Positions 32,055-43,979 of a DNA stretch of 64,000 bases are shown here, piece by piece. The stretch spans positions 124,001-188,000 of IMG/VR virus record IMGVR_UViG_3300005613_000001; one strand, given 5' to 3'. Position 1 is the first letter of the stretch; each line of letters opens with the position of its first letter. Under the pieces are notes generated by a model, which searched no databases, was not told the DNA's origin, and worked only from the letters and a program-made list of their open reading frames with translations. The position numbers and the translations under genes were made by a program.

Positions 32055-32141
32055 GGCGAGAACCCATCTTCCTGGCCGCCTCTGTCACCGCCAAGTGGGT
32101 GCGATTAAAAGCCGCACCACAGAGCGGTCGCTACCATCTAG

Positions 32142-32215
32142 TCGGGGTGAAAGGATTTGAACCTTCGACCTTCTGCTCCCGAAGCAGACGCGCTCCCAGG
32201 CTGCGCTACACCCCG
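32142..32215 (-). tRNA. tRNA-Pro(CGG)
   Basis: TCTGC-TT CGG GA-GCAGA. Confidence 0.92.
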
Positions 32216-32688: not shown

Positions 32689-32761
32689 TTTGGATAAATA
32701 AAATCAACCAATTTGAACTAAGATCGCCACCCGCTCCCACAGGAGCAGGTGGCGATTTGGA

Positions 32762-33079
32762 TTATCCTAGCAATTCCTTTGCCTTAGACAGAATCGTTCC
32801 GTTAATTCTAATGTCATGGACATCATCCTTCTCCCTTAACAACTCTTCCACGGTAATGATGGAACACCCAGTTTCCCAGGAATCCATCGGCCCGTAGCAG
32901 GAGCAATGACCTAAATCCTTTACCCAGACTCTTCCATCCTTCCCTAGAGCAACAGCCTGTCCAGATCCGTCATAGCACCCAATCTCGTAGTCGTGAATTA
33001 ACCACTCAAAATCAGCATCCGATACTTCATTTAAGTCCCAATCACACAACTCATCACCTAACTGATAAATCTTCATCAT
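32762..33079 (-). CDS. Hypothetical phage protein
   Basis: LGHCSCYGP motif. Confidence 0.6.
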   Translation of the reverse strand: MMKIYQLGDELCDWDLNEVSDADFEWLIHDYEIGCYDGSGQAVALGKDGRVWVKDLGHCSCYGPMDSWETGCSIITVEELLREKDDVHDIRINGTILSKAKELLG

Positions 33080-33283
33080 AGTACCTCCAATTAAAGGGTT
33101 GAAACATCTGAGTTTCTAACGGCCCATCAATTGAGGCTACAAATTAGATTTATCTTCCTCCATCCCAATCCGAATGCAAATCGGGAAAATCACTCATTGT
33201 TACTCCTGTGCCTTCATCTACATCTTTATCAGAAAAAGCATAGGAAAATAATTTGCACAAATCTTTCAACCATCTAAACATAG

Positions 33284-33357
33284 AGCTACCAGTGGGATTC
33301 GAACCCACGGCCTCTTGTTTACGAAACAAGCGCTCTGGCCGACTGAGCTATGGTAGC
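33284..33357 (-). tRNA. tRNA-Thr(CGT)
   Basis: CTTGT-TT CGT AA-ACAAG. Confidence 0.92.
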
Positions 33358-33456
33358 AATCTATTCTACACGACATTCATCTAATCGCCCTAAATCTCTT
33401 AGTCGAACCTGCCAAATCCAAGAATTAATTTTAACGTCTTTTATTTCTTGGATTTA

Positions 33457-33531
33457 CGAGAGCGACGGGACTTGAACCCGCAATCCCCAGCGTGACAGGC
33501 TGGTGCGTTAAACCAATTACGCTACGCCCCC
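33457..33531 (-). tRNA. tRNA-Asp(GTC)
   Basis: CCAGC-CT GTC AC-GCTGG. Confidence 0.92.
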
Positions 33532-34029
33532 TTTAACATATAATTTAGGGAAAGGCACATCAGGAATCGGCAGAGAGAAAAAATCGCACAGCTTATCCCA
33601 ACCATCGCCCTCAATTATATTCATTCTCAATAGCGGCTTATCTTGAAAAAAATCAGCCACCGCTGGGTAATGACTATTATATATTCTTACCCATTTCTTA
33701 AAATCAACCTTTAACCAATTCCCCTTATAGTTTTTTTTGTTTCTGTTTCGTTTTACATGACCCTCTCTGCTTCTAAGCCAACTTCGCAACTCACGCTCTG
33801 TTAAAATAAATTTAGCACCAGGAAACTTCCTGTGTAGCTCTCTAAAGTGGAAAGGAAGGTTGCCATCAAGATACGCATTAACCCTCTTTGTTCCAAAATC
33901 TAAATTTTCTAATAAAGCATTGTTTTTATGTTCATCATGTTGTGGTGTCCACCCCAATATTCTAAGTGCCGCACTCAAAGAATGCGTACCTGTTTTATTC
34001 AAGCCTATACAAAATACAAGAGGTTTCAT
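33517..34029 (-). CDS. Sulfotransferase family (Sulfotransfer_4-like)
   Basis: FCIGLNKTGTHSL...AKFILT.R...W..S...DGWDKLCDFF. Confidence 0.82.
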   Translation of the reverse strand: MKPLVFCIGLNKTGTHSLSAALRILGWTPQHDEHKNNALLENLDFGTKRVNAYLDGNLPFHFRELHRKFPGAKFILTERELRSWLRSREGHVKRNRNKKNYKGNWLKVDFKKWVRIYNSHYPAVADFFQDKPLLRMNIIEGDGWDKLCDFFSLPIPDVPFPKLYVKGGVA

Positions 34030-34034
34030 CTAAG

Positions 34035-34105
34035 AAGCCCCGCCTGGAATCGAACCAGATTCTTGAGGACCAAAACCTCATGTGATACCAATATACTACA
34101 GGGCC
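34035..34105 (-). tRNA. tRNA-Gln(TTG)
   Basis: TGAGG-TT TTG GT-CCTCA. Confidence 0.82.
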
Positions 34106-34109
34106 AAAG

Positions 34110-34178
34110 TGGAGGTAAAGGGAGTTGAACCCTTCGTCCGTCTGTGCGAGAGACAGCGCCTACCCGTAGAGTACCCCC
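34110..34178 (-). tRNA. Compact tRNA-Ala(CGC): tiny D-loop, 6-bp anticodon stem, 69 nt
   Basis: GGGGGTA/TACCTCC with G3:U70; CTGTCT-CT CGC AC-AGACGG. Confidence 0.7.
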
Positions 34179-34185
34179 TACTTAG

Positions 34186-34259
34186 AGCTACCGGAGGGAT
34201 TTGAACCCTCGGCCTCTTCATTACCAATGAAGCGCTCTGGCCTACTGAGCTACGGTAGC
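34186..34259 (-). tRNA. tRNA-Thr(GGT)
   Basis: CTTCA-TT GGT AA-TGAAG. Confidence 0.92.
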
Positions 34260-34265
34260 TTCTCT

Positions 34266-34871
34266 TTATCTTCTCCCAGATGTTAATTGTTCCATAAAGG
34301 TTTTAAATGGGGCTCTGTAAAACGTAGGAGCCTTATTCATTATTTCATATAACTTCTCTAAAGTCAATTCAGACCACTTGTTAGCAGTCATTCTTTGACC
34401 ATAATCAGAAAAGCCTCTGAATTCACTCTGCCAAAACTTCGTGACCATTGCATCTAAATCTAATTTAGGTTGCCAGTAGCAATGATCCCAGTCCAAACAG
34501 CACGGTCCAAATATCTTTTGGTCAAAATGAGCCGGGAAAGGCATACGACTAAGCGTTGCTTCCATAAGCTCTTCCTTGCTCAATTCCGACAAATCCTCAA
34601 AAGCATATCCGCCATATAAATATCCTCCCTCTCTATACGGCTGGAATGCAAACACCAAATGAGGAAATTGAACATATATGTGCTTCTTCTGGTTATAAAC
34701 AGTTCTCCTTTTCGGTGGATACAATCTTACTTCATGACCATCCTGCACCAGCAAAATCTTGTACTCAGGATCGCTTTTTGCGAAATCACTCTTCTTTACG
34801 GCCTTCTTTCGTGGTTTTCGTGTTCGTGGAGTTCGCTTCTTTGCACTTTTAACAGCTTCGCTCATTTCCAA
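34266..34871 (-). CDS. Divergent prokaryotic E2 family D-like protein
   Basis: PPKRRTV...VQFPHLVFAF...YLY.GYAF...MPFP....CC. Confidence 0.45.
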   Translation of the reverse strand: MEMSEAVKSAKKRTPRTRKPRKKAVKKSDFAKSDPEYKILLVQDGHEVRLYPPKRRTVYNQKKHIYVQFPHLVFAFQPYREGGYLYGGYAFEDLSELSKEELMEATLSRMPFPAHFDQKIFGPCCLDWDHCYWQPKLDLDAMVTKFWQSEFRGFSDYGQRMTANKWSELTLEKLYEIMNKAPTFYRAPFKTFMEQLTSGRR

Positions 34872-34908
34872 AACTCCTTTTCAATTCAATACACTCAGGC
34901 TATACCAA

Positions 34909-34993
34909 ATACAACGTCAGGATTCGAACCTGAACTTCTGGCTCCAATTCGCTTATGCTTTAGCCAGCGTGCTACCATTACACTACAATCGTA
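34909..34993 (-). ncRNA. tRNA-Gln-like RNA with ~13-nt insertion in anticodon loop
   Basis: Gln-type D-arm GTGT/GCAC, CTGGC/GCCAG stem, 20-nt loop ending TTGGA, intact T-arm. Confidence 0.6.
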
Positions 34994-35182
34994 CCGCTTT
35001 CAGAACGCTACTGAAATCTAACTACTCAAACTAACTACTAACTATGGACTATTGAGTATTGACCTGTCCAGGCCCTTCCCCTGGCTCACGGTTTTTATAG
35101 CCTAAGCGAATGTTATCAATACCTTTCATCCATAGGGTTCATTAACTCTTTCATCAAATTATTTCACGAACCTACTCACAAG

Positions 35183-35270
35183 CTCTGCGGGCTGGACTCG
35201 AACCAGCGATGGGGCTTTCGCCACTCCTGATTAACAGTCAGGCTCCTGCTACCAACTCGGATACCGCAGA
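35183..35270 (-). tRNA. tRNA-Asn(GTT) with long variable arm
   Basis: CCTGA-CT GTT AA-TCAGG; V-arm GGC-GAAA-GCC; 88 nt. Confidence 0.8.
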
Positions 35271-35275
35271 TTAAG

Positions 35276-35349
35276 CGACGGTGACGGGAATCGAACCCGC
35301 GCCCTCTTCCGTGACAGGGAAGCGCTCTTACTCTCTGAGCTACACCGCC
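35276..35349 (-). tRNA. tRNA-Asp(GTC)
   Basis: CTTCC-CT GTC AC-GGAAG. Confidence 0.92.
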
Positions 35350-35354
35350 TCAAT

Positions 35355-35729
35355 TTATTTTACACTTCTTCCTTTTACCTTCCCAGTTTTTGGTTTCTTG
35401 GCATCTTCAACCATTTTCTTAAAAGCATCTACTTCCTTTGTTGCCTCTTCGATTGTAACCTCATGACCGTAATTGCTTCCAAAATCACAAGATTCACAAC
35501 CACTGTTGGCGTAATCATCTACATCAATCTTATCTGTGCCAAACAACTCAGATAATGCCTTCAACTTCCCAAAACTCAAACGTGGGGCTTCATACATGGC
35601 ACCCCATTTAATTACAAGAGTACCATCAGTCCGCACCGAATACTCAAGATATGGCTTTGACCACTCTCTATCATCAGCAAGGATTTCCTCAATCCTGTGG
35701 CCGATCCATCTTGTCTTTTCTTTTTTCAA
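35355..35729 (-). CDS. Hypothetical phage protein
   Basis: SGCESCDFG motif. Confidence 0.6.
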   Translation of the reverse strand: MKKEKTRWIGHRIEEILADDREWSKPYLEYSVRTDGTLVIKWGAMYEAPRLSFGKLKALSELFGTDKIDVDDYANSGCESCDFGSNYGHEVTIEEATKEVDAFKKMVEDAKKPKTGKVKGRSVK

Positions 35730-36414
35730 TTTTTTCTTCTAACTTTCTTGCGTGTTCTGCTTTTTGTTCTTCTAATTGTTGTGCTGCGGCCTCTCTATCC
35801 GCTTTAGCTTCATCAAAATCCTTGAACAAAAGATTTCCTATTTGGAATCTGTCAATCGTCTCCAATCTGCCTTTCTCATCCTTATAGCACAACTCTTGTT
35901 CCGTTTCATGCACTACCTCAACATAGGAACCTTCTTCTGCCTGTCTGCCACCCCACAATAGGAACAACTTCTTACCCACGAAAGAATCATTCTCATCTAA
36001 TTCCGTTTCTATCCCACGACGTTCAAAGAATTGTGGCATATCTTTTGTAGATAAAGCCGTTTTTCGTTCATAATGCACTTGCTCTATCTTTGTTAATTTA
36101 CCATCAACGAAAGTCGCCTCAAAAGTTACAGACTCAGCATCTTCACCATCATAAGTGTATTCTCCTACTGGACCGCATGCAGATATTGTGCTTCCATAAA
36201 ATTCCACTACACCTGTGAAATTATCATAATTATCTGCTATGTTTGAAAACGGCCACTTGGTATCATCTCTCGCTTCTTCATCAAGCGTACCGTCCGCTGT
36301 TATGATTATAGTTGCTAAGGTGCAACCAAAATCCTTAGTTTGATATTCACCTACTAACTCCACCGGCTCGCCAGGAAGAGGATAGTCGCATCTTAAATAA
36401 TCAAACATTCCCAT
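35689..36414 (-). CDS. Hypothetical phage protein
   Basis: MGMFDYLRCDYPLP...YQTKD...FVDGKL phage-type N-terminus. Confidence 0.65.
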   Translation of the reverse strand: MGMFDYLRCDYPLPGEPVELVGEYQTKDFGCTLATIIITADGTLDEEARDDTKWPFSNIADNYDNFTGVVEFYGSTISACGPVGEYTYDGEDAESVTFEATFVDGKLTKIEQVHYERKTALSTKDMPQFFERRGIETELDENDSFVGKKLFLLWGGRQAEEGSYVEVVHETEQELCYKDEKGRLETIDRFQIGNLLFKDFDEAKADREAAAQQLEEQKAEHARKLEEKIEKRKDKMDRPQD

Positions 36415-36673
36415 CTAGTTGCTCCATTTTTCTCGTAATAATTGAGTAATCTTTATCATCCTTCGCCTTTTTGACAGATACATGAACATTGCCTACTAAA
36501 AATTCAACAGGTTCAACCTCATTAACTTTGACTCGACCTAAAGCTAATTCATCAGTTCCTTCAGCTATTTCCTTTCTTAATTTTCTACTCTCTATAGAAA
36601 GTGATGCAACTTCCTCACCAATCTGTATGAACCGCTTAACCTTCTCAATGAATTCAGCCTTGTCCATCTTCAT
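36401..36673 (-). CDS. Hypothetical protein
   Basis: ORF chain. Confidence 0.55.
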   Translation of the reverse strand: MKMDKAEFIEKVKRFIQIGEEVASLSIESRKLRKEIAEGTDELALGRVKVNEVEPVEFLVGNVHVSVKKAKDDKDYSIITRKMEQLDGNV

Positions 36674-36683
36674 TTCCTTTCAG

Positions 36684-36755
36684 AGCTACCGGAGGGATTT
36701 GAACCCACAACATTCACATTACAAATGTGACGCTCTGCCATTGAGCTACGGTAGC
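36684..36755 (-). tRNA. tRNA-Thr(TGT)
   Basis: TCACA-TT TGT AA-TGTGA; one T-stem mismatch. Confidence 0.88.
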
Positions 36756-36876
36756 AATTGCGGTTAATCTTTTGGCTTAGATCGTGCTGCCATCACTGGT
36801 TGTCAAAAGCCGCAACCTATCAGAATGATAGTTTTGACAACCACCAAAAAACCGCCGCAATTGGCATTTTATCAAG

Positions 36877-36952
36877 CTGCGAGGGTAGGAATCGAACCTA
36901 CGAACCCCTGGTTCAAAGCCAGGTATTTCTTACCAACAGAAACTACCTCGCA
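36877..36952 (-). tRNA. tRNA-Gln(TTG)
   Basis: CCTGG-CT TTG AA-CCAGG; U1-A72. Confidence 0.88.
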
Positions 36953-36966
36953 AAATTTAATTTTAG

Positions 36967-37041
36967 AGGCTGGTCTGGGATTTGAACCCAGGACAATCTG
37001 ATTAACAGTCAGACGCTCTAACCGGACTGAGCTAACCAGCC
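36967..37041 (-). tRNA. tRNA-Asn(GTT)
   Basis: TCTGA-CT GTT AA-TCAGA. Confidence 0.9.
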
Positions 37042-37796
37042 ACCATAAATTCTTTTCTCACTTTTTCTGGAGGTTTTCTCCAATCCAACTTTATTTTTCC
37101 CGCTCTCAACTTACTTTGGTGACCAAAATTCACACTATAGTTGTCATCATGCAAACACCACATGGTACTTCTAAATGGAATTCTTGCAGGGTTAAAAAGT
37201 TTATGAACCTGATGCCTTCCCAACCAACTTACGGCCCACTCAAAATCATTCATATTACTTTTAACATAAGAAGCCTTAACGGCAACTGTGCTTCCACAAT
37301 GAAGGTTTAAATCATCGTTCGGAACCATCTTTCCCGTTTGCGTGTTTAAAATATATCCTCTATTTGAAATTACAACTCTTTTTTGTCGTTTCATCAAATC
37401 TCCTACAAGGCGATTTGATATTAAATCATCTGCATCCATCATGAAAAAATACTTTGGGTCCATCTCCAATGCAGCTTCTACTGTTAATAACCTCTTTTTA
37501 GCCTTATCTACATTATGTTCTCTGGTTATTGCCTGCCAGTGAGACAAGCTTGTTTCTTCCAATGGTGCGATATAGGGTTGAGGATGCGAAATTGGATCTG
37601 TGCCCATTTCCAAAATCGTCACCTTTTCATGGTCTATATCATCGTCCAAAGGCAACTTCTTGTTTGCACCAACAAAAATATGAAACCTATCATCCCTGCT
37701 GTTGCAAACACTTCTAATTGTATTGTTTAATAATCTCCAAATTTCTGCGTAGTTGCAGTTCTCAGGGTGTTTTACTGGAATTACAAAAGCTATCAT
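37032..37796 (-). CDS. GT-A-fold glycosyltransferase-like
   Basis: FVIPVKHP...DKAKKR...MMDADDLIS. Confidence 0.7.
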   Translation of the reverse strand: MIAFVIPVKHPENCNYAEIWRLLNNTIRSVCNSRDDRFHIFVGANKKLPLDDDIDHEKVTILEMGTDPISHPQPYIAPLEETSLSHWQAITREHNVDKAKKRLLTVEAALEMDPKYFFMMDADDLISNRLVGDLMKRQKRVVISNRGYILNTQTGKMVPNDDLNLHCGSTVAVKASYVKSNMNDFEWAVSWLGRHQVHKLFNPARIPFRSTMWCLHDDNYSVNFGHQSKLRAGKIKLDWRKPPEKVRKEFMVAG

Positions 37797-37818
37797 TTTT
37801 CTTTCTGGTTAAAGTAAG

Positions 37819-37900
37819 TAGGGCCGGTGGGTAACGCTCCCACATTGCGGTTTCCCGCCCTGATTAAGAGTCAGGTGCATTGCTTGTCTGCCACGACCCC
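37819..37900 (-). tRNA. tRNA-Lys(CTT) with long V-arm and aberrant T-loop AGCGTTA
   Basis: CCTGA-CT CTT AA-TCAGG; V-arm GCGG-GAAA-CCGC. Confidence 0.7.
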
Positions 37901-37905
37901 AAATT

Positions 37906-38478
37906 TTATTCTCCTGCTTGTTCTAAAATCTTCTTTGCCTTTTCAATTTCCTTAGCCTTCTTCTTTTCCGCTCGCTTCTTAGCCGCTTCGGCCCTCTTTG
38001 CCTTTTCCCTCTTCAATCTTGCCACTTCAGCATCATAAACCTTCTTCTGCTTTGCCGTAAACAACTTCTTAAGGGAAGGCTTCGTCATAGCCTGTACAAT
38101 TTGTACATTTTCATCGGCTAATGCTCGTATCGTATTCTCCCGCATTCTGGTTACATCAACCTCACTTGGAGAACCCCAACTATTTCGTCTCCTGTCTATG
38201 TAATAAAACTTCTTCCCCGCCACCAGCTTTTCTTCACGATCTTGGATAGCCTTCTTATCCACCCAGCCAAGTGAAGCAAGCAAATTCAAAACAAACTCAT
38301 TCTTTTCCTCAATCGCCTTCCTAATTAAAGCAGCCACTTCGCCTTGAGTTTCATAGTTCCCTATCAAATCAACTAAACTAACTTCTTGCACGGTGACTTC
38401 AGGATCATAGGAACCATAATCATCAGCACCCTCACAATAATGTTCTTCCGTACTAACCAAAATTAACTTACGTGACAT
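37906..38478 (-). CDS. Hypothetical protein with Lys/Ala-rich helical tail
   Basis: ORF chain. Confidence 0.6.
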   Translation of the reverse strand: MSRKLILVSTEEHYCEGADDYGSYDPEVTVQEVSLVDLIGNYETQGEVAALIRKAIEEKNEFVLNLLASLGWVDKKAIQDREEKLVAGKKFYYIDRRRNSWGSPSEVDVTRMRENTIRALADENVQIVQAMTKPSLKKLFTAKQKKVYDAEVARLKREKAKRAEAAKKRAEKKKAKEIEKAKKILEQAGE

Positions 38479-38962
38479 TTCTGTTCCTCAAACATTCATA
38501 TAGTGATTGTTCTTCACTATCAGTAGGGGTCACCAGAGCTTTATCCTCTATAATCAAAACTTTTGCATGTATCTTTCTATGGCAATTAGAACAAACACAA
38601 ATGCATTTCTTGATTTCTTCAATTAGTTTTTCAATACTCTTCTTAGCTACCCACGCCGATATGTTATCATTTTTATCATTTACATGGTGGAAATCAAGAC
38701 AACAGGGTTCCGTTTCTCCACAAAAACAACACCCTTCCCTCTTTTTTATTTCCTCAACTACTAATCTTATTTTTTGTTTCTTAATCCTGTTGTATTCTGT
38801 ACTTTTGTGCAAAACCACATCGCGGTTGGTTTTGTAATATTCCTTGGCATTTTGGATAGCACAAATCTTACAGTATGAGTGTAATCCATCCTTCTTGCCA
38901 GGACTTTTATGAAACTCCTCAATGCTTTTTTCTTTGTTACATCTTTTACATCGCTTAACCAT
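38468..38962 (-). CDS. HNH homing endonuclease with N-terminal Zn finger
   Basis: CKRCNKEK..EF...YCKIC; CCFCGE..PCCLDFHH...KCICVCSNCHRKIH. Confidence 0.82.
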   Translation of the reverse strand: MVKRCKRCNKEKSIEEFHKSPGKKDGLHSYCKICAIQNAKEYYKTNRDVVLHKSTEYNRIKKQKIRLVVEEIKKREGCCFCGETEPCCLDFHHVNDKNDNISAWVAKKSIEKLIEEIKKCICVCSNCHRKIHAKVLIIEDKALVTPTDSEEQSLYECLRNRNVT

Positions 38963-39026
38963 AATAACCTCCTAAGTTATTATAGTTAAGCTAGATTAAA
39001 ATTCCCTCTATTTTTTTAAACCAAAG

Positions 39027-39100
39027 TGAGCCCAGCGAGACTCGAACTCGCAGTCTACGGATTAAAAGTCCGTTGCATTAGCCTATTATGCTATGGGCTC
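39027..39100 (-). tRNA. tRNA-Lys(TTT)
   Basis: ACGGA-CT TTT AA-TCCGT. Confidence 0.92.
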
Positions 39101-39106
39101 AATCAG

Positions 39107-39187
39107 TAGGGCCGGTGAGATTCGAACTCACATTGTCCTTTCGGACCCAGATTAAAAGTCTGGAGCATCCCTATCTGCCACGACCCC
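39107..39187 (-). tRNA. tRNA-Lys(TTT) with long V-arm
   Basis: CCAGA-CT TTT AA-TCTGG; V-arm GTCC-GAAA-GGAC. Confidence 0.8.
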
Positions 39188-39256
39188 TTCAATATTGGGG
39201 TCTGCGTTTCAATCTGTAAGGGTCACGAATCATTTTTAATTCTCCTGTTATTAAAG

Positions 39257-39331
39257 TCGGGGTGAAAGGATTTGAACCTTCGGCCCCTGGTCCCCCAGAC
39301 CAGTGCTCTATCCAGGCTGAGCTACACCCCG
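39257..39331 (-). tRNA. tRNA-Pro(GGG)
   Basis: CTGGT-CT GGG GG-ACCAG. Confidence 0.92.
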
Positions 39332-39334
39332 TAG

Positions 39335-39403
39335 TAGAGCGTGCTGCCATTACACTACCGCCGCCTTCCGGCACCGGACGGGAATCGAACCCGCACTTCT
39401 CCA
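39335..39403 (-). ncRNA. Circularly permuted tRNA-like module B (T-arm, loop-closed acceptor, D-arm)
   Basis: TGGAG AAGT GCGGG-TTCGATT-CCCGT CCGGTGCC-GGAA-GGCGGCGG TA GTGT-AATGGCA-GCAC G CTCTA. Confidence 0.75.
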
Positions 39404-39458
39404 TTGGACTACTGGAAATAAATTTCCAGGCGAGAATTGAACCCGCACTTACTTCCAA
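39404..39458 (-). ncRNA. Permuted tRNA-like module C (D-arm missing)
   Basis: TTGGA..AAGT GCGGG-TTCAATT-CTCGC CTGGAAA-TTTA-TTTCCAG TAG TCCAA. Confidence 0.55.
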
Positions 39459-39459
39459 G

Positions 39460-39544
39460 AGACGATGGTGGGATTCGAACCCACGCGGAGCTAATGCTCG
39501 ACAGTTTTGCAGACTGTTGCCTTCAACCACTCGGCCACATCGTC
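39460..39544 (-). tRNA. tRNA-Cys(GCA) with long V-arm
   Basis: ACAGT-CT GCA AA-ACTGT; V-arm GAGC-ATTA-GCTC; U73. Confidence 0.82.
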
Positions 39545-39548
39545 ATAC

Positions 39549-39619
39549 AGAGAGCGTGCTACCCTTAACACCACCCCCGCCTTACGGCGGTGACGGGATT
39601 CGAACCCGTACTTCTCTCT
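39549..39619 (-). ncRNA. Circularly permuted tRNA-like module A
   Basis: AGAGAG AAGT ACGGG-TTCGAAT-CCCGT CACCGCC-GTAA-GGCGGGGG TG GTGT..GCAC G CTCTCT. Confidence 0.75.
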
Positions 39620-39633
39620 TTCTCACTTTTAAG

Positions 39634-39707
39634 TCGGAATGCCTGGAATCGAACCAGAACCTCTTGCTTATCAGGCAAACGTGCAGAAACCACTACACCA
39701 CATTCCG
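39634..39707 (-). tRNA. tRNA-Ile(GAT)
   Basis: TTTGC-CT GAT AA-GCAAG. Confidence 0.85.
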
Positions 39708-40277
39708 ATGTTCCTTTCGGTGACAATTCGTACAAAGAACTTCACACTTGTCTATTTCCTCTTTCAAATAATCCAAAGAATGACCTGATGCTAAAAGGTA
39801 CGCAATTGTAAACCTTTTGTCTTCAAGATGATGAAATTCTAAACATCTAGAGTCGTCTTCACTACAAGCTTTACATTTGGACAATTTGATAAAATCAATA
39901 AACCATCTTCTTTTTTTAATTCTCCTTTCTCCAAAATTTCTCCAATTTGATCCATCTTCTATAATTAAAGGCTCATGTCTCTTTCGGTGACAATTACCAC
40001 AAATAACTTCACACTTGCTTATCTCTATTTGAAGTTTTTCTATTGTGGTAGCATTCCGTATAAGCTGACTAACTGTGTTCGATTTTCCATTTACATGATG
40101 AAAGTCCAAACAAATCTTATCATCTATTCCACACTCACAACACCTTGTCTTAAGAGAATAAACATACTCATTGTTTCTTCGCCTCCGACTTTTTATTCCT
40201 TCTCTGTATTTGTCTTTGTTTTTTAAATAGTGTTTCTTTTGAGCCTCTTTTTGTCTTTGTTTGTCTTTATAGGGCAT
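39693..40277 (-). CDS. Homing endonuclease with two tandem HNH domains
   Basis: Two copies of C..C.....CL.FHH...KCEV.C.NCHRK.H. Confidence 0.82.
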   Translation of the reverse strand: MPYKDKQRQKEAQKKHYLKNKDKYREGIKSRRRRNNEYVYSLKTRCCECGIDDKICLDFHHVNGKSNTVSQLIRNATTIEKLQIEISKCEVICGNCHRKRHEPLIIEDGSNWRNFGERRIKKRRWFIDFIKLSKCKACSEDDSRCLEFHHLEDKRFTIAYLLASGHSLDYLKEEIDKCEVLCTNCHRKEHRNVV

Positions 40278-40334
40278 ATTGAACCTCCTCTATTATATAG
40301 AGTAAGGTTCAATACATTTTACCACCCTTTTTAG

Positions 40335-40410
40335 GGTGGCAGAGCGGAATCGAACCGCCGCCAACCTCGTTCACAGCGAGGCTCAGGAAACCAACACCTG
40401 ATCCTGCCAC
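40335..40410 (-). tRNA. tRNA-His(GTG)
   Basis: CCTCG-CT GTG AA-CGAGG; C73; G-1 apparently not encoded. Confidence 0.82.
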
Positions 40411-40412
40411 AG

Positions 40413-40487
40413 TGGGAATACTTGGATTCGAACCAAGGGCCTCATCCTTATCAGGGATGCGCTCTAAACCGACTGAGCTATATTCCC
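40413..40487 (-). tRNA. tRNA-Ile(GAT)
   Basis: CATCC-CT GAT AA-GGATG. Confidence 0.92.
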
Positions 40488-40509
40488 AGTTTTAATTCCT
40501 CCTTTTAAG

Positions 40510-40586
40510 TCGGGGCGAAAAGATTCGAACTTTCGGCCTCCTGGTCCCAAACCAGGCGCTCTTAAACCAGGCTGAGCTACGCCCCG
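40510..40586 (-). tRNA. tRNA-Pro(TGG)
   Basis: CCTGG-TT TGG GA-CCAGG. Confidence 0.92.
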
Positions 40587-40598
40587 GTGGAGCCACCA

Positions 40599-41054
40599 TC
40601 AGGCAGCATGCTTTTCCCTCAGGTGGCATAATTGTTTTTTATATTTTTCGCTGTGTTCTCTAACAGCCTCTTTTCCTTTTTTAGTTAAATGCCAATATCG
40701 GTATCCTCTATTTCTAGGGCCAAACTCGCCCCCTTCTTTTTCATACAGCCAACCGAACTCCATCATCAATTTAAATTTAGTTTCAGGAACTTTTATTCCA
40801 CTTGCCGTATAGGCGGTTGCATTTCTCCTTCCATCGGGTCGTTCTACAATGCAACCCCAGTACAATTCTCGTTCCGCAACCGTCGCCTCTTTTTCTTTTG
40901 CTAGGTGGCCCCAATTTTGTTTGAAGCCCCAACTCATTTTATAACGAGGCGGCAATTTCTTTCGTACAACAACAGGCGTTAAGGCTTCCAAAACATCCCA
41001 CAGAGTAGGAATATGTTTATGTTTTTTGCCACACCGTTTTTGTACTCTTTTCAA
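40599..41054 (-). CDS. Basic hypothetical protein
   Basis: 151-aa ORF. Confidence 0.55.
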   Translation of the reverse strand: MKRVQKRCGKKHKHIPTLWDVLEALTPVVVRKKLPPRYKMSWGFKQNWGHLAKEKEATVAERELYWGCIVERPDGRRNATAYTASGIKVPETKFKLMMEFGWLYEKEGGEFGPRNRGYRYWHLTKKGKEAVREHSEKYKKQLCHLREKHAA

Positions 41055-41200
41055 GGTTCGGTCTCCTTTTCTTCTTTTATAAAAACTTTACCACACCACT
41101 TACATCTGAATTCGTTACAATCACATTCACAAAAAACGAATTCATTATCCCCACATGAGGGGCAAATCGGTTCTTCTTTTTTCATTTCATCCTTTCTGAG

Positions 41201-41272
41201 AGCGGCTAGTCGGAATTGAACCGAACTCTTCCAGCTTGGCAAGCTAGCGTGCAACCATTACACCTTAGCCGC
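41201..41272 (-). tRNA. tRNA-Gly(GCC)
   Basis: CTAGC-TT GCC AA-GCTGG; U73. Confidence 0.88.
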
Positions 41273-41278
41273 TTAAAG

Positions 41279-41348
41279 CAGGTGCGGAGTGATTCGAACA
41301 CTCTCTTCTGGTTTTGGAGACCAGAGCTACTCCCAGGCAGTCGCACCT
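41279..41348 (-). tRNA. Compact tRNA-Trp(CCA): short D-arm, 6-bp anticodon stem, 3-nt V-loop
   Basis: TCTGGT-CT CCA AA-ACCAGA; 70 nt. Confidence 0.75.
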
Positions 41349-41538
41349 ATTTCTGTCTCATTTTTTCATACCAAATTTCTTTTTCAATTGCTTCTGTTGG
41401 CATTACCATTCCACATCGAGAACATTTAAAAGGGGCAAACTTAACCCCTGCATATACTTACAAAGTTTGCAATAATGCCCACCTGTAAATCTCCAAATCG
41501 GCTGTTCTCTTTCTTTTTTTTTCCATACCAACTCATAG

Positions 41539-41611
41539 TGACCCGGAAGGGAATCGAACCCTCGTATCCCTGGCTGAGAACCAGGGTGCCTAACCAACAC
41601 AGCACCGGGCC
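41539..41611 (-). tRNA. tRNA-Glu(CTC)
   Basis: CCTGG-TT CTC AG-CCAGG. Confidence 0.82.
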
Positions 41612-41693
41612 GCGCTCTACGGATTGAAGCAAGGCAGTTGCGTCCAACTCGCACTCTCTTATTTATAGGGAGCTTAGACCCCCATCCGTAAAG

Positions 41694-41764
41694 AGCGGGT
41701 GAAGGGTGTCGAACCCTCGTCAACAGGTTGGAAACCTGTGGCTCTACCGTTGAGCTACACCCGC
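41694..41764 (-). tRNA. tRNA-Gly(TCC)
   Basis: ACAGG-TT TCC AA-CCTGT. Confidence 0.9.
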
Positions 41765-42177
41765 CAATGTTTTTTGGCATGGCAATTTGCACACAAAGGA
41801 GTACATTTTTCAATCTCTTTCAATACTCTTTGTTTGCATCCTGACATTACCAAGCGTGATACAGTCTCCTCTTTATCATCCTCATTATGGTGAAATTGGA
41901 TGCATGCAGGATGGTTTTCTCCGCATTCTGCACATTTAAATCTAACTTTATAATCCTTCCACCAACCCCTAAAACTCTTCCTCCAAACTGCTGCTTTGCC
42001 AATGTACTTTTTCTTATTCGCTAAGTAGTGCTGCCGACGATATGCTCTTTGGCAATCAATACATTGACTCTGCAACCCATCTGAAGCTCGTTTTCTACTC
42101 TTGAAACAACTACGTGGGAGATTTTTTTTACACCCACAACATTTTTTAGTATCCATACCAATATATAGTGTTTCCAA
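41755..42177 (-). CDS. HNH homing endonuclease with N-terminal Zn finger
   Basis: CCGCKK...QCIDC; CAECGENHPACIQFHH...KCTPLCANCHAKKH. Confidence 0.82.
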   Translation of the reverse strand: METLYIGMDTKKCCGCKKNLPRSCFKSRKRASDGLQSQCIDCQRAYRRQHYLANKKKYIGKAAVWRKSFRGWWKDYKVRFKCAECGENHPACIQFHHNEDDKEETVSRLVMSGCKQRVLKEIEKCTPLCANCHAKKHWRV

Positions 42178-42213
42178 CCGGATTTTTGTTTGGAAACCTC
42201 ATAAATTTCCAAG

Positions 42214-42302
42214 TGACGCTGACGGGAATCGAACCCGTGTGGTTATAATAACCTTCAGGTTGAAAGCCTGAATACCCTTTAGCCAACAGAGTGCCCAGCG
42301 CC
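42214..42302 (-). tRNA. tRNA-Glu(TTC) with long V-arm
   Basis: TTCAGG-CT TTC AA-CCTGAA; V-arm GGTTA-TTA-TAACC; 89 nt. Confidence 0.75.
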
Positions 42303-42305
42303 TCA

Positions 42306-42725
42306 TTAATATAATTTTAAATCTCCTGTTACTTTGTCAATTTTCTCTGCATCATCTGGTCCGATTGCGATACAAGTTGGTGTTGGAACTCCATCAAATT
42401 CGGTTTTCCCACTATCAACGATCAATTCACAAACGAGCCCTTCATCTTCTGCTTTCTGTTTAACTTCCATCAATTCTTCTTCGCTATTCACTCTAACGGT
42501 GACTTTAGCGAAGCTATTTTTTATCCATTCAATTTCTTGTTCGCTTAGATGTAGAACATCCAGAAGTTTTACTGTTCCTGCCCAGGGCAGAGGATGTTTT
42601 TGATCTAATTCTTTTCTAATTCTGTTTGATAAAAAGGCCATTGAGGCATGAGACCCTTGGGCAATTTCTTTACCCCGCCTCATTTTTAAATCTTTACGAA
42701 TTACAATGACCTGTTTTACTGGCAT
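42306..42725 (-). CDS. pth2: Peptidyl-tRNA hydrolase, Pth2 family
   Basis: KQVIVIRKDLKM.RGK..AQ.SHA; DSGKTEF...T.T..AIGP...IDKVTG.LKL. Confidence 0.93.
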   Translation of the reverse strand: MPVKQVIVIRKDLKMRRGKEIAQGSHASMAFLSNRIRKELDQKHPLPWAGTVKLLDVLHLSEQEIEWIKNSFAKVTVRVNSEEELMEVKQKAEDEGLVCELIVDSGKTEFDGVPTPTCIAIGPDDAEKIDKVTGDLKLY

Positions 42726-42922
42726 TTGTATTGTTTTTTTCTATGTCTTTTCCATGTGAAGTGGTGATCGTCGCTTCTTAGCAAATCTTCCCAAGCACAG
42801 GGAAGGCTTGCTTGACTTCTTTTGGCACGAATTTTCACTTCGTAGCCATCTACTGTAATTTGCGATCTTTTACCATTCACCCTTCGTTCTTGCGTAGTAC
42901 GAGGATTTCTTAACCATCCCAT
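42716..42922 (-). CDS. Small basic phage protein
   Basis: RNPRTTQERR...RAKR....LP.AWED...WKRHRKKQY. Confidence 0.65.
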   Translation of the reverse strand: MGWLRNPRTTQERRVNGKRSQITVDGYEVKIRAKRSQASLPCAWEDLLRSDDHHFTWKRHRKKQYKCQ

Positions 42923-42996: not shown

Positions 42997-43074
42997 AAAA
43001 AAACCCGCTTCCTGAGCGGGTTTATGTTCCGGCTCAGGCTTGGACCTGAACCGATCTATTTTGTTCGGTTCAGA
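42997..43074 (-). promoter_or_regulatory. Attenuator 2 (alternative hairpins + intrinsic terminator)
   Basis: CTGAACCGA/TCGGTTCAG, TCGGTTCAGG/CCTGAGCCGG, CCTGAGC/GCTCAGG, AAACCCGCT-CAGGA-AGCGGGTTTTTT. Confidence 0.8.
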
Positions 43075-43203
43075 TCAGGGCGCTGGGGCATTATCTTCAT
43101 GTCCTGTACGCCCATTTGTTTCGCCTTGTTTTGGCGTAATGGTAGCGCACGGGCACGTAATGCCTTGCCAACAAACCTGATTTTTTTGAACCGATACTAA
43201 CAT
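43075..43203 (-). CDS. Leader peptide 2 MLVSVQKNQVCWQGITCPCATITPKQGETNGRTGHEDNAPAP
   Basis: GGAG RBS; stop abuts attenuator; below ORF-track cutoff. Confidence 0.75.
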   Translation of the reverse strand: MLVSVQKNQVCWQGITCPCATITPKQGETNGRTGHEDNAPAP

Positions 43204-43222
43204 GATTTTCTCCGTTACTTAT

Positions 43223-43251
43223 ATAGTAACAACTCTTCATTTTTTTGTCAA
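43223..43251 (-). promoter_or_regulatory. Sigma70-type promoter driving leader 2
   Basis: TTGACA-17 nt-TACTAT. Confidence 0.75.
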
Positions 43252-43265
43252 GTTAAATCAAAAAG

Positions 43266-43350
43266 CGCTGGGGCTTGGAATCGAACCAAGCGTTTTTACC
43301 GGCTGCCCATTATAGACATGAGGTAGTGTTCTACCATTGAACTACCCAAC
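43266..43350 (-). ncRNA. tRNA-like RNA with enlarged (21-nt) anticodon-loop region
   Basis: D-arm GTTC-AATGGTA-GAAC, T-arm CTTGG-TTCGATT-CCAAG, no assignable anticodon. Confidence 0.55.
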
Positions 43351-43352
43351 AG

Positions 43353-43424
43353 TGGTCGGAGCGGGAATTGAACCACGCATCTCCCTCTTTAATGGAGGGC
43401 GTTCTAGCGTTGAACTATCCAACC
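43353..43424 (-). tRNA. Aberrant tRNA with TTA (ochre) anticodon, probably non-decoding
   Basis: CCCTC-CA TTA AA-GAGGG; A33, no D-loop GG, bulged T-stem. Confidence 0.45.
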
Positions 43425-43651
43425 ATAACCCTGTCGGGGTCGCAGGGCTTAAAACCCATTTTGACGATCCAACAGGGAACAAATAGTGAGAGTAAGAGGT
43501 TTAGTTCCTTTACTGGCGTTCAGGAATCTAACCTGCCAGGCCCTACTCTCCAATTTGGACTACACACAACGCAACTTTTGGTCACAAAGTACCGGGTCGC
43601 TTTGCGTCCCAGATCTTTGCTTAGGGGTCGCTTTGCGTCCCCCGACCAAAG

Positions 43652-43722
43652 TGGCAAGAGTAGGTATCGCGCCTACCTAAGCCGAACTTATGAGGCTCGG
43701 CGGGTCACTTGACCATCTTGCT
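43652..43722 (-). tRNA. Compact tRNA-like gene with CAT anticodon
   Basis: 4-nt D-loop, 7-bp anticodon stem GCCGAGC/GTTCGGC, T-loop CGCGATA, 1:72 mismatch. Confidence 0.55.
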
Positions 43723-43905
43723 ATATTGTGCAGACCCGCTACTAGCTCTCGCTAGCCTACCCTAAAGGCCGAACTGCACACAGGTTGCCAACCTATCCCT
43801 GATGTTGGCTTTAATGTCGTCAGGGCGACAATTCTCTACGGTACAATTCCTTTTTTTTGTGTCGGCTGCTACACGCTGTTTTTTTGTTTTTGACAGCAGG
43901 GCAAG

Positions 43906-43979
43906 TGGCGGGAACAGGATTCGAACCTGCGACCTCAAGGTTATGAGCCTTGCGAGCTACCGGGCTGCTCCATCCCGCG
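43906..43979 (-). tRNA. tRNA-fMet-like (CAT)
   Basis: CGCGGG start, C1 mismatch, CAAGG-CT CAT AA-CCTTG (only two of three anticodon-stem G-C pairs). Confidence 0.85.

What the first reader, a model, noticed from the sequence alone, without database searches (positions are those of the whole stretch)
42997..43251. 'tRNA census' attenuator 2: independent leader covering all 13 amino acids of the second tRNA cluster
Seen: TTGACA-17-TACTAT promoter, GGAG RBS, a 42-codon leader, then the same A:B/B:C/C:D/terminator layout. It shares the CCTGAGCCG and CCGCTCAGG cores with attenuator 1 but has a different A/B sequence that still pairs. The downstream cluster (42302 to 32142) encodes tRNAs for E, G, W, P, I, H, C, K, N, Q, T, D and A. 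All 13 occur in the leader, and 35 of its last 37 codons belong to this set (no L, S, F, Y or M after codon 5). Isoacceptor-level matches include ACG/ACC/ACA (three Thr), CCG/CCA/CCC (three Pro), GGA/GGC, and GCG for the odd Ala(CGC). GAG and AAG are absent. The two leaders have unrelated sequences, and each matches its own cluster. Prediction: a third L/S/Y/F-rich leader precedes a Leu/Ser/Tyr/Phe cluster elsewhere in this genome, since none of those tRNAs is in this window. Caveats: 13 of 20 amino acids is a large set, and the cluster spans about 11 kb with internal HNH promoter-like motifs.
Basis: partly seen in the sequence, partly recalled or inferred. Interest (0 to 1): 0.93.

Follow-up and report, generated by a model that had tools for sequence, protein, structure and literature searches.

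The report
Phage tRNA-array leader-peptide attenuator
A giant phage places a short translated leader and a switchable terminator in front of its tRNA genes, and the leader's codons mirror the tRNAs behind it, so the phage probably makes more tRNAs when ribosomes run short of them; no such control of tRNA genes was found in the literature searched.

Summary
At 43251-42997 on the minus strand there is a promoter-like site, GGAG, a 42-codon ORF, five alternately complementary segments and a terminator, followed by PTH2 and 26 tRNA genes.

The element is not a one-off. I found 14 distinct copies in uncultured phage contigs, several of them 0.2-0.6 Mb, and none in 185,579 bacterial or archaeal genomes or in cultured phages. 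Every copy has a short ORF whose stop lies within -8 to +4 nt of segment A. All copies with downstream sequence have tRNA genes there.

Folding gives the same three states throughout:
- Untranslated RNA forms the terminator.
- With A free, A:B and C:D form the antiterminator.
- With A masked by a ribosome at the stop, B:C and D:E form the terminator.

A:B covaries, with 6 of 10 pairs compensated.

Leaders match their own tRNA arrays far better than other members' arrays (permutation P about 3e-6, and 1e-4 without the discovery pair). This also holds at anticodon level. Out-of-sample predictions were largely met for two extended arrays and only partly for two others.

Best reading: a ribosome-mediated attenuator giving feedback control of phage tRNA supply. 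This is a new variant of a known mechanism and is untested experimentally. The predicted third Leu/Ser/Tyr/Phe leader was not found.

The parts
43223..43251 (-). Promoter-like site: TTGACA, 17-nt spacer, TACTAT
   Evidence: 10 of 12 matches. The -10 overlaps the motif CTATATAAGTA (43216-43226). That motif also precedes the att1 leader and tRNA-Met, where it lacks a -35 at this spacing. The true promoter type is therefore uncertain.
43210..43213 (-). Shine-Dalgarno GGAG, 6 nt before the ATG
   Evidence: Read. Most family members have an SD-like purine run at this position.
43075..43203 (-). Leader ORF of 42 codons plus TGA; the proposed sensor
   Evidence: It is homologous to the L013 leader, with 9 synonymous differences among 18 conserved residues. 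35 of 41 codons fall in the array's amino-acid set, and 18 of 20 anticodon species have a cognate codon.
43176..43194 (-). Segment Z (codons 4-9). It pairs with the stop/A region in untranslated RNA, so the default is termination.
   Evidence: MFE fold. The same 5'-leader:A pairing appears in 13 of 14 members.
43063..43076 (-). Segment A, starting 1 nt into the stop codon; masked by a terminating ribosome
   Evidence: A starts between -8 and +4 nt from the stop in 14 of 14 members.
43043..43056 (-). Segment B, which pairs with either A or C
   Evidence: dG(A:B) = -18.0 and dG(B:C) = -17.3 kcal/mol. A:B covaries across the family.
43029..43038 (-). Segment C (CCTGAGCCGG), which pairs with B or D
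   Evidence: The core is invariant across the family.
43011..43020 (-). Segment D (CCCGCTCAGG). It is the 3' arm of the antiterminator C:D or the 5' arm of the terminator D:E.
42997..43009 (-). Segment E (AGCGGG) plus a run of seven T; together with D it forms the intrinsic terminator (hairpin 43023-43001)
42306..42922 (-). First genes after the terminator: a 68-aa ORF (42922-42716) and peptidyl-tRNA hydrolase PTH2 (42725-42306)
   Evidence: PTH2 E = 4.5e-33. A homologous small ORF follows the L013 copy.
32141..42302 (-). tRNA array 2: 26 tRNA genes and 20 anticodon species for E, G, W, P, I, H, C, K, N, Q, T, D and A, interspersed with small ORFs
   Evidence: No other strong minus-strand terminator lies in this stretch.
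43265..43979 (-). Upstream, outside attenuator control: tRNA-Met(CAT) and two suppressor-type tRNAs (UUA, CUA), behind a perfect sigma-70 consensus promoter at 44048-44021
   Evidence: An upstream tRNA-Met recurs in five other members.
13754..13966 (-). Paralogous attenuator 1. The leader ORF (13926-13840) is rich in R, A, V and Q. The same C, D and E cores are present. It sits directly before Arg x3, Val x4, Gln, Ile(UAU)-like, Ala x2 and Gly tRNAs.
   Evidence: 19 of 27 codons lie in the set RVQAG (binomial P = 2e-6).

Best explanation
The element is a ribosome-mediated (leader-peptide) transcription attenuator that gates a phage operon of PTH2 plus a long tRNA array. The leader works as a roll-call of the tRNAs encoded behind it.

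**Proposed mechanism**
1. RNA that is not being translated folds with the 5' leader (Z) paired to A. B then pairs with C, D pairs with E, and transcription stops.
2. A ribosome that translates smoothly to the UGA sits on A, which starts inside or next to the stop codon. Again B:C and D:E form and transcription stops.
3. A ribosome that stalls earlier, because the charged tRNA for any leader codon is scarce, melts Z and leaves A free. A pairs with B as soon as B emerges. C is then left to pair with D, the terminator cannot form, and RNA polymerase reads into the tRNA array.
4. The new tRNAs relieve the stall. This closes a negative feedback loop on the phage-supplemented tRNA pool.

**Shown here:** the sequence anatomy, its conservation and covariation, the predicted alternative folds, and the statistical match between each leader and its own array.

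**Inferred:** translation of the leader, kinetic trapping of the antiterminator, how far read-through extends, and the physiological trigger.
For: **Anatomy.** All features are present at the stated coordinates. The leader RNA fold has z = -6.6, and the paralogue gives -6.7.

**Family.** There are 14 distinct members, all in phage-like contigs. Bacterial and archaeal genomes gave 0 members.

**Common layout.** Every member has a short ORF ending -8 to +4 nt from A. All members with downstream sequence have same-strand tRNA genes there.

**Predicted folds**
- Nascent RNA up to D folds as A:B plus C:D in 13 of the 13 members folded (L220 was found later and not included).
- With the stop region masked it folds as B:C with D free in 11 of those 13.
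- Full untranslated RNA folds as 5'-leader:A, B:C and D:E in 13 of 14.

**Covariation**
- In the A:B helix 95.6% of cells are paired and 6 of 10 pairs show changes on both sides.
- The covariation score is 0.544, against 0.299 +/- 0.03 in shuffles (0 of 500 as high) and at most 0.22 when slid.
- Member L220 changes C, D and E together.

**Coding signal.** att2 and L013 share 18 residues, 9 of them through synonymous codons.

**Leader versus own array**
- Amino-acid permutation: P = 3e-6. Replication set of nine: P = 1.3e-4.
- Codon-level permutation: P = 7e-6.
- Within one genome: att1 versus att2, P = 0.006; L088 versus L092, P = 0.05 to 9e-5 depending on tRNA calls.
- Anticodon species with a cognate codon: 18/20 for att2 and 25/25 for L098 (P < 1e-5).

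**Predictions made before fetching more sequence**
- L220 leader residues F, F, D, R and W gained tRNAs further down the array. No Leu, Ser or Tyr tRNA appeared. 37 of 38 codons are then in set.
- For L098, predicted P, T, G, V, E, Q and I tRNAs were found and Leu was absent.

**Other support.** The att2 region gives sub-threshold matches to the Phe and Trp leader models. PTH2 is the first annotated gene after the terminator.
Against: - There is no experimental or transcript data. The host is unknown and the phage is uncultured.
- For att2 alone the signal is moderate (joint P about 5e-4), because 13 of 20 amino acids is a large set.
- The att2 leader also holds L, S, R and three V. The Arg and Val tRNAs lie in the other array.
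- Three members show no match (L081, L134, and L098 on the enrichment score), and L092 is weak. Its Arg-rich leader finds Arg tRNAs only 15 kb downstream, beyond many protein genes.
- Several arrays are cut by contig ends, and some tRNA identities are ambiguous because of inserts.
- All leaders are poor in L, S, Y and F. This could partly reflect the base composition needed for the long hairpin rather than sensing.
- The leaders share motifs (MxTF at the N-terminus; GAT-AAT or GAT-ACT near the stop) that a pure composition sensor does not need.
- In most members the terminator state is the thermodynamic minimum. Read-through therefore depends on kinetic trapping and RNA polymerase pausing, neither of which is shown.
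- Promoter-like sites inside the array (42340, 34367) could uncouple distal tRNAs from the attenuator.
Confidence: 0.74

Rival explanations
1. The element is a generic translation-coupled attenuator. The same RNA switch reports only whether ribosomes are translating at normal speed (overall translational capacity). The leader's composition is not tuned to the particular tRNAs downstream.
For: The switch geometry lets a stall at almost any codon give read-through. Some members show no leader-array match (L081, L134, L098 by enrichment). All leaders share a similar bias: rich in T, A, R and P, and poor in L, S and Y.
Against: Leaders fit their own arrays far better than other members' arrays (P = 3e-6 and 7e-6). 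Two leaders in one genome differ in the direction of their own arrays. Anticodon coverage reaches 25/25 and 18/20. Out-of-sample predictions held.
Confidence: 0.13
2. The short ORF encodes a functional micropeptide or a nascent arrest peptide. Its sequence, not its codon content, is what matters. The hairpins couple its translation to downstream expression.
For: Conserved pieces include MLVS, WQ.GITCPC, PKQGE and TGH.DN between att2 and L013. MxTF and (V/E)RP...EDT recur in other members, with synonymous changes at conserved residues.
Against: Most positions differ even between the closest pair (24 of 42). Across the family only short terminal motifs persist, while composition tracks the array. 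There is no Pfam hit, and the peptide has no hydrophobic core or known arrest motif.
Confidence: 0.06
3. The element is an ordinary intrinsic terminator or insulator that ends the upstream tRNA-Met/suppressor unit. An independent promoter follows, and the ORF and extra hairpins are incidental.
For: The element lies directly after three tRNA genes that have their own consensus promoter. The terminator is strong and is the thermodynamic ground state.
Against: The promoter-like site lies upstream of the terminator, not after it. The ORF-stop-A geometry, the B mimic of D, and the C:D alternative are kept in 14 diverged loci with covariation. Chance does not give ORFs ending within 12 nt of A in every member.
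Confidence: 0.04
4. The element is a direct RNA sensor (T-box-like or riboswitch-like) that binds tRNA or a small molecule. The ORF is not translated.
For: The leader region is a long, stable hairpin (z = -6.6), and the regulated genes are tRNAs.
Against: There is no T-box or riboswitch match even at a permissive threshold. SD and start codon are kept in most members. The stop codon always abuts A. Conserved residues carry synonymous changes. Leader sequences are too variable for a ligand pocket.
Confidence: 0.03

Closest known systems
Classical leader-peptide transcription attenuators of amino-acid operons in Proteobacteria (trpL, hisL, leuL, thrL, ilvL/ilvGMEDA, pheL)
   Same: Both have a short translated leader, overlapping alternative hairpins, and an intrinsic terminator. 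Untranslated RNA defaults to termination. A stalled ribosome favours the antiterminator. The regulatory codons name what is being sensed. The ilv and thr attenuators are already multivalent (2-3 amino acids). The att2 region gives weak sub-threshold matches to the Phe_leader and Trp_leader models.
   Different: This element gates tRNA genes and PTH2 rather than biosynthetic enzymes. There are no runs of one codon. Instead, up to 25 anticodon species are each represented once or a few times. There is one more pairing layer (Z, A, B, C, D, E), and the stop codon sits on A, so a stall almost anywhere upstream gives read-through. It is phage-encoded. It does not reach any Rfam leader threshold.
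pheST (phenylalanyl-tRNA synthetase) attenuator of E. coli
   Same: It is a leader-peptide attenuator that controls a component of the translation apparatus in response to the supply of one charged tRNA (from established knowledge).
   Different: It senses a single amino acid and regulates a synthetase, not tRNA genes. It is a cellular element, and there is no sequence similarity.
T-box riboswitches
   Same: They serve the same purpose: sensing tRNA status and switching a terminator/antiterminator pair upstream of translation-related genes.
   Different: A T-box binds one uncharged tRNA directly through a specifier codon and the T-box motif, without a ribosome. No such motifs or Rfam match are present here. 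This element would read many tRNAs through translation.
Leader-peptide stalling switches of resistance genes (ermC, cat, cmlA) and arrest peptides (TnaC, SecM)
   Same: In each, a ribosome paused on a short upstream ORF remodels downstream RNA structure.
   Different: Those respond to a drug or metabolite acting with a specific nascent peptide, and most act on translation initiation. Here composition varies with the downstream genes and the output is transcription termination.

Membership tests
Ribosome-mediated (leader-peptide) transcription attenuators | Short ORF with ribosome-binding site immediately upstream of the regulated genes | tested here: met
   A 42-codon ORF with GGAG 6 nt upstream. 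An equivalent ORF is present in all 14 family members.
Ribosome-mediated (leader-peptide) transcription attenuators | Intrinsic terminator between the leader and the regulated genes | tested here: met
   Hairpin at 43023-43001 followed by seven T. D:E is present in all members, with dG from -12 to -29 kcal/mol.
Ribosome-mediated (leader-peptide) transcription attenuators | Mutually exclusive antiterminator sharing a strand with the terminator | tested here: met
   C:D competes with D:E. Nascent RNA up to D folds as A:B plus C:D in 13 of the 13 members folded.
Ribosome-mediated (leader-peptide) transcription attenuators | Ribosome position on the leader decides which structure forms | tested here: inconclusive
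   The geometry fits. A starts -8 to +4 nt from the stop in 14 of 14 members. Masking the stop region switches the fold to B:C in 11 of 13. The 5' leader pairs with A in untranslated RNA in 13 of 14. Function was not measured.
Ribosome-mediated (leader-peptide) transcription attenuators | Leader enriched in codons that correspond to the regulated product | tested here: met
   att2 has 35 of 41 codons in set and 18 of 20 anticodon species covered. Family permutation tests give P = 3e-6 and 7e-6.
Ribosome-mediated (leader-peptide) transcription attenuators | Regulated genes are amino-acid biosynthesis or aminoacyl-tRNA synthetase genes | tested here: not met
   The downstream genes are PTH2 and 26 tRNA genes.
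Rfam leader families (Trp_leader RF00513, Phe_leader RF01859 and the other leader models) | Score at or above the family's gathering threshold | tested here: not met
   No hit at gathering thresholds. The best sub-threshold scores are Phe_leader at 25.7 bits against 55, and Trp_leader at 20.4 against 41.
T-box riboswitch | Stem I with specifier loop and the conserved T-box antiterminator sequence | tested here: not met
   No T-box match on the window at gathering thresholds, or on the element at E <= 10.
Experimentally defined attenuators (any class) | Termination efficiency changes with translation of the leader or with tRNA supply | not testable with these tools
   This needs reporter, in-vitro or Term-seq data. 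The phage is uncultured.

The most novel reading that the evidence does not exclude
These attenuators are an inducible counter-defence and tRNA-pool homeostat. The phage monitors, codon by codon, whether the host's tRNAs are still usable, for example after attack by anticodon nucleases or after host tRNA decay during infection. It transcribes its replacement tRNA array and a peptidyl-tRNA hydrolase only when a ribosome stalls. One short leader carries a codon for nearly every tRNA species in the array, and an initiator-like tRNA-Met kept outside the switch guarantees that the sensor itself can start.
Probability: 0.3. Interest if true: 0.95.

Novelty: new variant of a known kind. Interest (0 to 1): 0.88.

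Why it matters
Why phages carry tens of tRNA genes, and how those genes are expressed, is an open question. tRNA genes in general are regarded as controlled at the promoter and by processing, not by sensing their own products.

A leader-peptide attenuator whose codons list the downstream tRNAs would be the first feedback loop in which tRNA supply directly sets transcription of tRNA genes. It would extend attenuation from one to three amino acids up to 25 tRNA species read by a single 40-codon sensor. It would also give a testable link between phage tRNA arrays and tRNA-targeting host defences.

The small, modular switch could be reused as a reporter of the availability of chosen tRNAs. The family also gives a sequence handle for finding tRNA operons and their boundaries in uncultured giant phages.

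Tried and rejected
- **Known RNA families.** The Rfam gathering scan of the window gave only tRNAs. A permissive scan of the element gave only sub-threshold Phe and Trp leader and sRNA hits. A permissive scan of the att1 region gave nothing meaningful.
- **Cultured phages.** blastn of the 1.8-kb region and of two attenuator cores hit only tRNA-Met or chance matches. A Brevundimonas phage Gurke hit lies inside protein genes with no tRNAs.
- **Bacterial origin.** The core pattern gave 71 loci in 185,579 species genomes. All were REP-like repeats, 23S rRNA or chance.
- **Third attenuator in this phage.** Walking about 7.7 kb left and 8.8 kb right of the window found only two isolated tRNAs on the left and none on the right.
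- **Stop-codon recoding** (prompted by the two suppressor tRNAs). ORF statistics fit the standard code.
- **MAFFT plus RNAalifold on the whole switch.** This recovered only the invariant C:D stem, so I aligned the A:B hairpin separately. I did not build a covariance model, because the B columns were misaligned.
- **The roughly 110-nt unit** between a sigma-70-like promoter and the att1 leader is not significantly structured (z = -1.65) and has no relatives.
- **Array extension.** Two attempts to extend arrays failed because the exact protein was not on record (L013, L012). One look-up at the window's right end failed for the same reason.
- **ARAGORN with the intron option** changes some identities in marine members. 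I therefore ran the tests with strict and inclusive sets, and both gave the same result.
Full report
**What is at the coordinates**

All features lie on the minus strand.
- The window shows TTGACA (43251-43246), a 17-nt spacer and TACTAT. The consensus scan scores this 10 of 12.
- GGAG lies 6 nt before an ATG at 43203. The ORF has 42 codons and ends with TGA at 43077-43075.
- After the stop come five short segments that are alternately complementary:
  - A: 43076-43063
  - B: 43056-43043
  - C: 43038-43029 (CCTGAGCCGG)
  - D: 43020-43011 (CCCGCTCAGG)
  - E plus seven T: 43009-42997
- The terminator scan reports D:E at 43023-43001.
- The motif CCTGAGC...GCTCAGG occurs twice in the window, here and at 13809-13777. 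Shuffled sequence gives none.
- Folding the transcript gives -89.3 kcal/mol, z = -6.6 against dinucleotide shuffles. The copy at 13.8 kb gives z = -6.7.

**What lies around it**
- Downstream are an 11-codon ORF, a 68-aa ORF and a peptidyl-tRNA hydrolase PTH2 (E = 4.5e-33).
- Then come 26 tRNA genes between 42302 and 32141.
- Upstream, behind a perfect sigma-70 consensus promoter, are tRNA-Met and two suppressor-type tRNAs.

**Is it more than chance for this locus alone?**

I used equal-length windows drawn from the window's own long ORFs as the null.
- At least 35 of 41 residues in the 13-amino-acid set: P = 0.006.
- All 13 amino acids present: P = 0.036.
- Both together: P = 4.6e-4.
- Of 196 short ORFs in all six frames, only one meets both criteria.
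- At anticodon level the leader has a cognate codon for 18 of the array's 20 anticodon species. P = 5e-4 with Watson-Crick and G:U reading, and about 5e-3 with full wobble.
- 33 of 41 codons are decodable by the array (P = 0.004).
- For the paralogue, 19 of 27 residues are R, V, Q, A or G (binomial P = 2e-6).
- An Rfam-detected tRNA that ARAGORN missed in array 1 has anticodon UAU. This would also account for the paralogue leader's ATA codons.

**It is a family**

The window is part of a 527-kb IMG/VR contig. An ENA contig of 239 kb is identical over the stretch compared.

Exact-pattern scans of IMG/VR and of JGI/ENA metagenomes found further copies with the same C, D and E cores. There are 14 distinct sequences in all. 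The contigs reach 121 kb (two copies on one contig), 346 kb, 373 kb and 596 kb.

The other pattern hits were 23S rRNA fragments and REP-like repeats. The same pattern found no family member in one genome from each of 185,579 bacterial and archaeal species. Cultured phages also gave none. Five full-text literature searches found no description of leader-peptide attenuation of tRNA genes.

**Conserved anatomy**
- In every member a short ORF of 27-51 codons ends next to the first switch segment. A begins between -8 and +4 nt from the first base of the stop codon.
- Same-strand tRNA genes follow in all members with downstream sequence, sometimes within 5-20 nt.
- All four helices are predicted in each member. 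dG ranges are A:B -5 to -19, B:C -12 to -19.5, C:D -11 to -18, and D:E -12 to -29 kcal/mol.
- B imitates D and C imitates E. C pairs perfectly with B but with a mismatch to D, and D pairs perfectly with E.

The A:B helix varies in sequence yet stays paired.
- In a 12-sequence alignment 95.6% of cells are standard pairs.
- Six of ten pairs have changes on both sides.
- The covariation score is 0.544, against 0.299 +/- 0.03 in shuffles (0 of 500 as high) and at most 0.22 when the partner is slid.

Member L220 has changed the inner part of C, D and E together (CCTGAGCCA / TGGCTCAGG / CCTGAGCCAAGG). I infer that the near-invariance of the cores follows from five segments having to stay mutually complementary.

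**Predicted switch**
- Nascent RNA from just before the stop to the end of D folds as A:B plus C:D, the antiterminator, in 13 of the 13 members folded. L220 was found later and was not included.
- When the stop codon and the next 10 nt are made unavailable, as under a terminating ribosome, the fold becomes B:C with D free in 11 of those 13. The other two keep C:D thermodynamically, although B:C would form first.
- The complete untranslated transcript folds with the 5' UTR or first codons paired to the stop/A region, B:C formed and the D:E terminator formed in 13 of 14 (for this locus).

Together these give three states:
1. Untranslated RNA terminates.
2. A ribosome at the stop terminates.
3. 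A ribosome stalled earlier in the leader frees A, so A:B and C:D form and transcription reads through.

Because A sits at the very end of the ORF, a stall at almost any codon should count. A multi-tRNA sensor needs exactly this property. These steps are inferred from folding. In most members the terminator state is the thermodynamic minimum, so read-through must rely on co-transcriptional trapping.

**Is the ORF translated?**

Direct evidence is lacking, but three points favour translation.
- Most members keep an SD-like purine run.
- The stop codon keeps its register with A.
- The att2 leader and its homologue in L013 share 18 residues, 9 of them through different synonymous codons, with 24 amino-acid differences.

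Leaders across the family share only short motifs (MxTF at the start; Asp-Asn or Asp-Thr encoded by GAT-AAT or GAT-ACT shortly before the stop) and otherwise diverge quickly.

**The census claim tested across the family**

For each member I counted leader residues whose amino acid has a tRNA in that member's own downstream array. I expressed this as a z score against pooled leader composition and then permuted leaders among arrays.
- Eleven or twelve distinct members give a summed z of about 18, against a permutation SD of 4. P is 3e-6 to 1e-5.
- Dropping the two discovery cases and the att2 homologue still gives P = 1.3e-4.
- The own leader ranks first for 6 of 12 arrays.
- A codon/anticodon version gives P = 7e-6.
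- Coverage is nearly complete at amino-acid level: 13/13, 11/11, 10/10, 6/6, 14/15 and 15/16.
- One leader of 40 codons carries a cognate codon for all 25 anticodon species of its array, against a mean of 16 in random gene windows (P < 1e-5).

Genome-wide codon bias cannot explain this, because two leaders in one genome differ in the direction of their own arrays.
- att1 versus att2: Fisher P = 0.006.
- L088 versus L092, which share one contig: P = 0.05 with strict tRNA calls and 9e-5 with intron-tolerant calls.

Striking single cases:
- A K/N/C/I-rich leader sits before Asn, Lys, Cys and Ile tRNAs.
- A G/E/P/D/T/M-rich leader sits before Gly, Glu, Pro, Asp, Thr and Met tRNAs.

**Out-of-sample predictions**
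- **L220.** When first seen, its leader had six residues without a matching tRNA (R, W, F, F, C, D) and lacked L, S and Y. Fetching 10 kb more revealed Phe x2, Asp x2, Arg and Trp x2, and no Leu, Ser or Tyr. 37 of 38 leader codons are then in set.
- **Four further members.** I wrote predictions in the notebook before fetching more sequence.
  - L098 gained Pro, Thr, Gly, Val, Glu, Gln and Ile as predicted, with no Leu tRNA. There was one odd Ser(ACU) call, and Phe has not yet been seen.
  - L088 gained Thr and none of Ala, Asp, Glu, Pro or Val, but it has a Gly tRNA that the leader lacks.
  - L092 was weak. Arg tRNAs appear only 15 kb downstream, after many protein genes.
  - The L013 prediction could not be tested, because no exact protein was on record.

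**Weak points**
- The per-locus significance for att2 is moderate, because the set is large.
- Its leader also contains Leu, Ser, Arg and three Val.
- Three members with cut or sparse arrays show no match.
- Some tRNAs carry inserts that make their identity uncertain.
- All leaders are poor in Leu, Ser, Tyr and Phe. This fits arrays that lack those tRNAs, but it could also reflect the composition of a stable hairpin.
- Promoter-like sites inside the array (42340, 34367) might free distal tRNAs from control. However, no other strong minus-strand terminator is seen in the array.
That motif also precedes the att1 leader and tRNA-Met without a properly spaced -35, so the promoter type is open.

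**Comparison with known systems**

Mechanistically this works like the trp/his/leu/thr/ilv/phe attenuators. It has a leader peptide, competing hairpins, an intrinsic terminator and a default-off state. Its only Rfam similarities are sub-threshold hits, headed by the Phe and Trp leader models.

It is not a member of any curated leader family or of the T-box family. It also differs in several ways:
- It controls tRNA genes and PTH2.
- Its codon logic has many species present once or a few times each, not a run of one codon.
- It has an extra pairing layer, with the stop codon on the first switch segment.
- It is confined, as far as sampled, to giant uncultured phages.

I therefore rate it a new variant of a known kind. 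The mechanism class is familiar, but the target, the multi-tRNA census logic and the implied product feedback are not.

**Verdict**

The third-leader prediction is the exception: it found no support in about 80 kb around the arrays or with three core patterns in the 527-kb contig.

| Reading | Confidence |
|---|---|
| Attenuator with census-type leader | about 0.74 |
| Generic translation-rate sensor (main rival) | about 0.13 |

Interest is 0.88.

Noticed in passing
window 43265-43425 (-): Two suppressor-type tRNAs lie between tRNA-Met and the att2 promoter. One has anticodon CUA (86 nt, long extra arm) and the other UUA. ORF-length and stop-usage statistics do not suggest stop-codon recoding in this window. 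The att2 leader ends in UGA, which neither would read. The att1 leader ends in UAA.
   Followed up: partly
window 43905-43979 (-); also L013, L130/L369, L126, L220/L367: A tRNA-Met(CAT) sits 0.3-0.9 kb upstream of the leader in six family members, so it is outside attenuator control. The window's copy has a C1xC72 mismatch at the top of the acceptor stem, which is an initiator-like trait.
   Followed up: partly
window 13943-13953, 43216-43226, 43988-43998 (all -): The exact motif CTATATARNTA occurs only three times in 64 kb, and always just upstream of a tRNA-related unit: the att1 leader, the att2 leader and tRNA-Met. In two cases it lies well downstream of a separate sigma-70-like promoter. 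It could be a phage-specific promoter or a processing signal. The window also encodes a sigma-70-like protein.
   Followed up: partly
window 10633-10730 (-): A 98-nt tRNA scores 57.6 bits in Rfam. ARAGORN misses it without the intron option and calls it Tyr(AUA) with it. Its anticodon loop is CUUAUAA (UAU, reading Ile AUA), and it has a 28-nt extra arm. It would add Ile to array 1, whose leader has two ATA codons and one ATT.
   Followed up: partly
window 34908-34994 (-): A tRNA-like gene with an oversized anticodon loop. ARAGORN calls a 4-base anticodon 'aaag', and Rfam tRNA scores 41 bits. Its identity is unknown.
   Followed up: no
L088, L092, L038, L045 (for example L092 5444-5537, L088 6656-6749, L045 2306-2430): Several tRNAs in the marine relatives carry 15-32-nt inserts in the anticodon loop, some able to form a small hairpin. 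ARAGORN changes their identity depending on whether introns are allowed.
   Followed up: partly
leader ORFs of att2, L013, L220, L098, L045, L092, L081, L012, L066: The codon pair GAT-AAT or GAT-ACT (GAT-ACC, GAT-ACG and GAT-ATT in three members) is kept 1-6 codons before the leader stop. It resembles a -10 hexamer, so it could be a pause or promoter-like signal rather than, or as well as, Asp-Asn/Thr codons. Many leaders also start with MxTF.
   Followed up: no
window 13962-14110 (-): A sigma-70-like promoter (TTGACA, 17-nt spacer, TATGAT) is followed by about 110 nt ending in a T-run, just upstream of the att1 leader. The fold is not significantly stable (z = -1.65), and no similar sequence occurs in cultured phages.
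   Followed up: partly
L371 8559-9734 and 20279-20600; L374 1-118: IS605-type OrfB/TnpB (Cas12f-like) genes lie inside or beside the tRNA regions of the marine relatives. This may explain why their arrays are broken up by long protein-coding stretches.
   Followed up: no
window about 53926-54817 (-); L376 17234-19454: Translation-related phage genes lie near the arrays. They include a sigma-70-like protein and an IF1/eIF-1A-like protein in the window. A Thg1-like tRNA-His guanylyltransferase and a Glu/Gln-tRNA-synthetase-like fragment lie just beyond the left end. Prok-JAB and ThiF genes lie upstream of the arrays in the relatives, and a Prok-JAB gene does so in the window.
   Followed up: no
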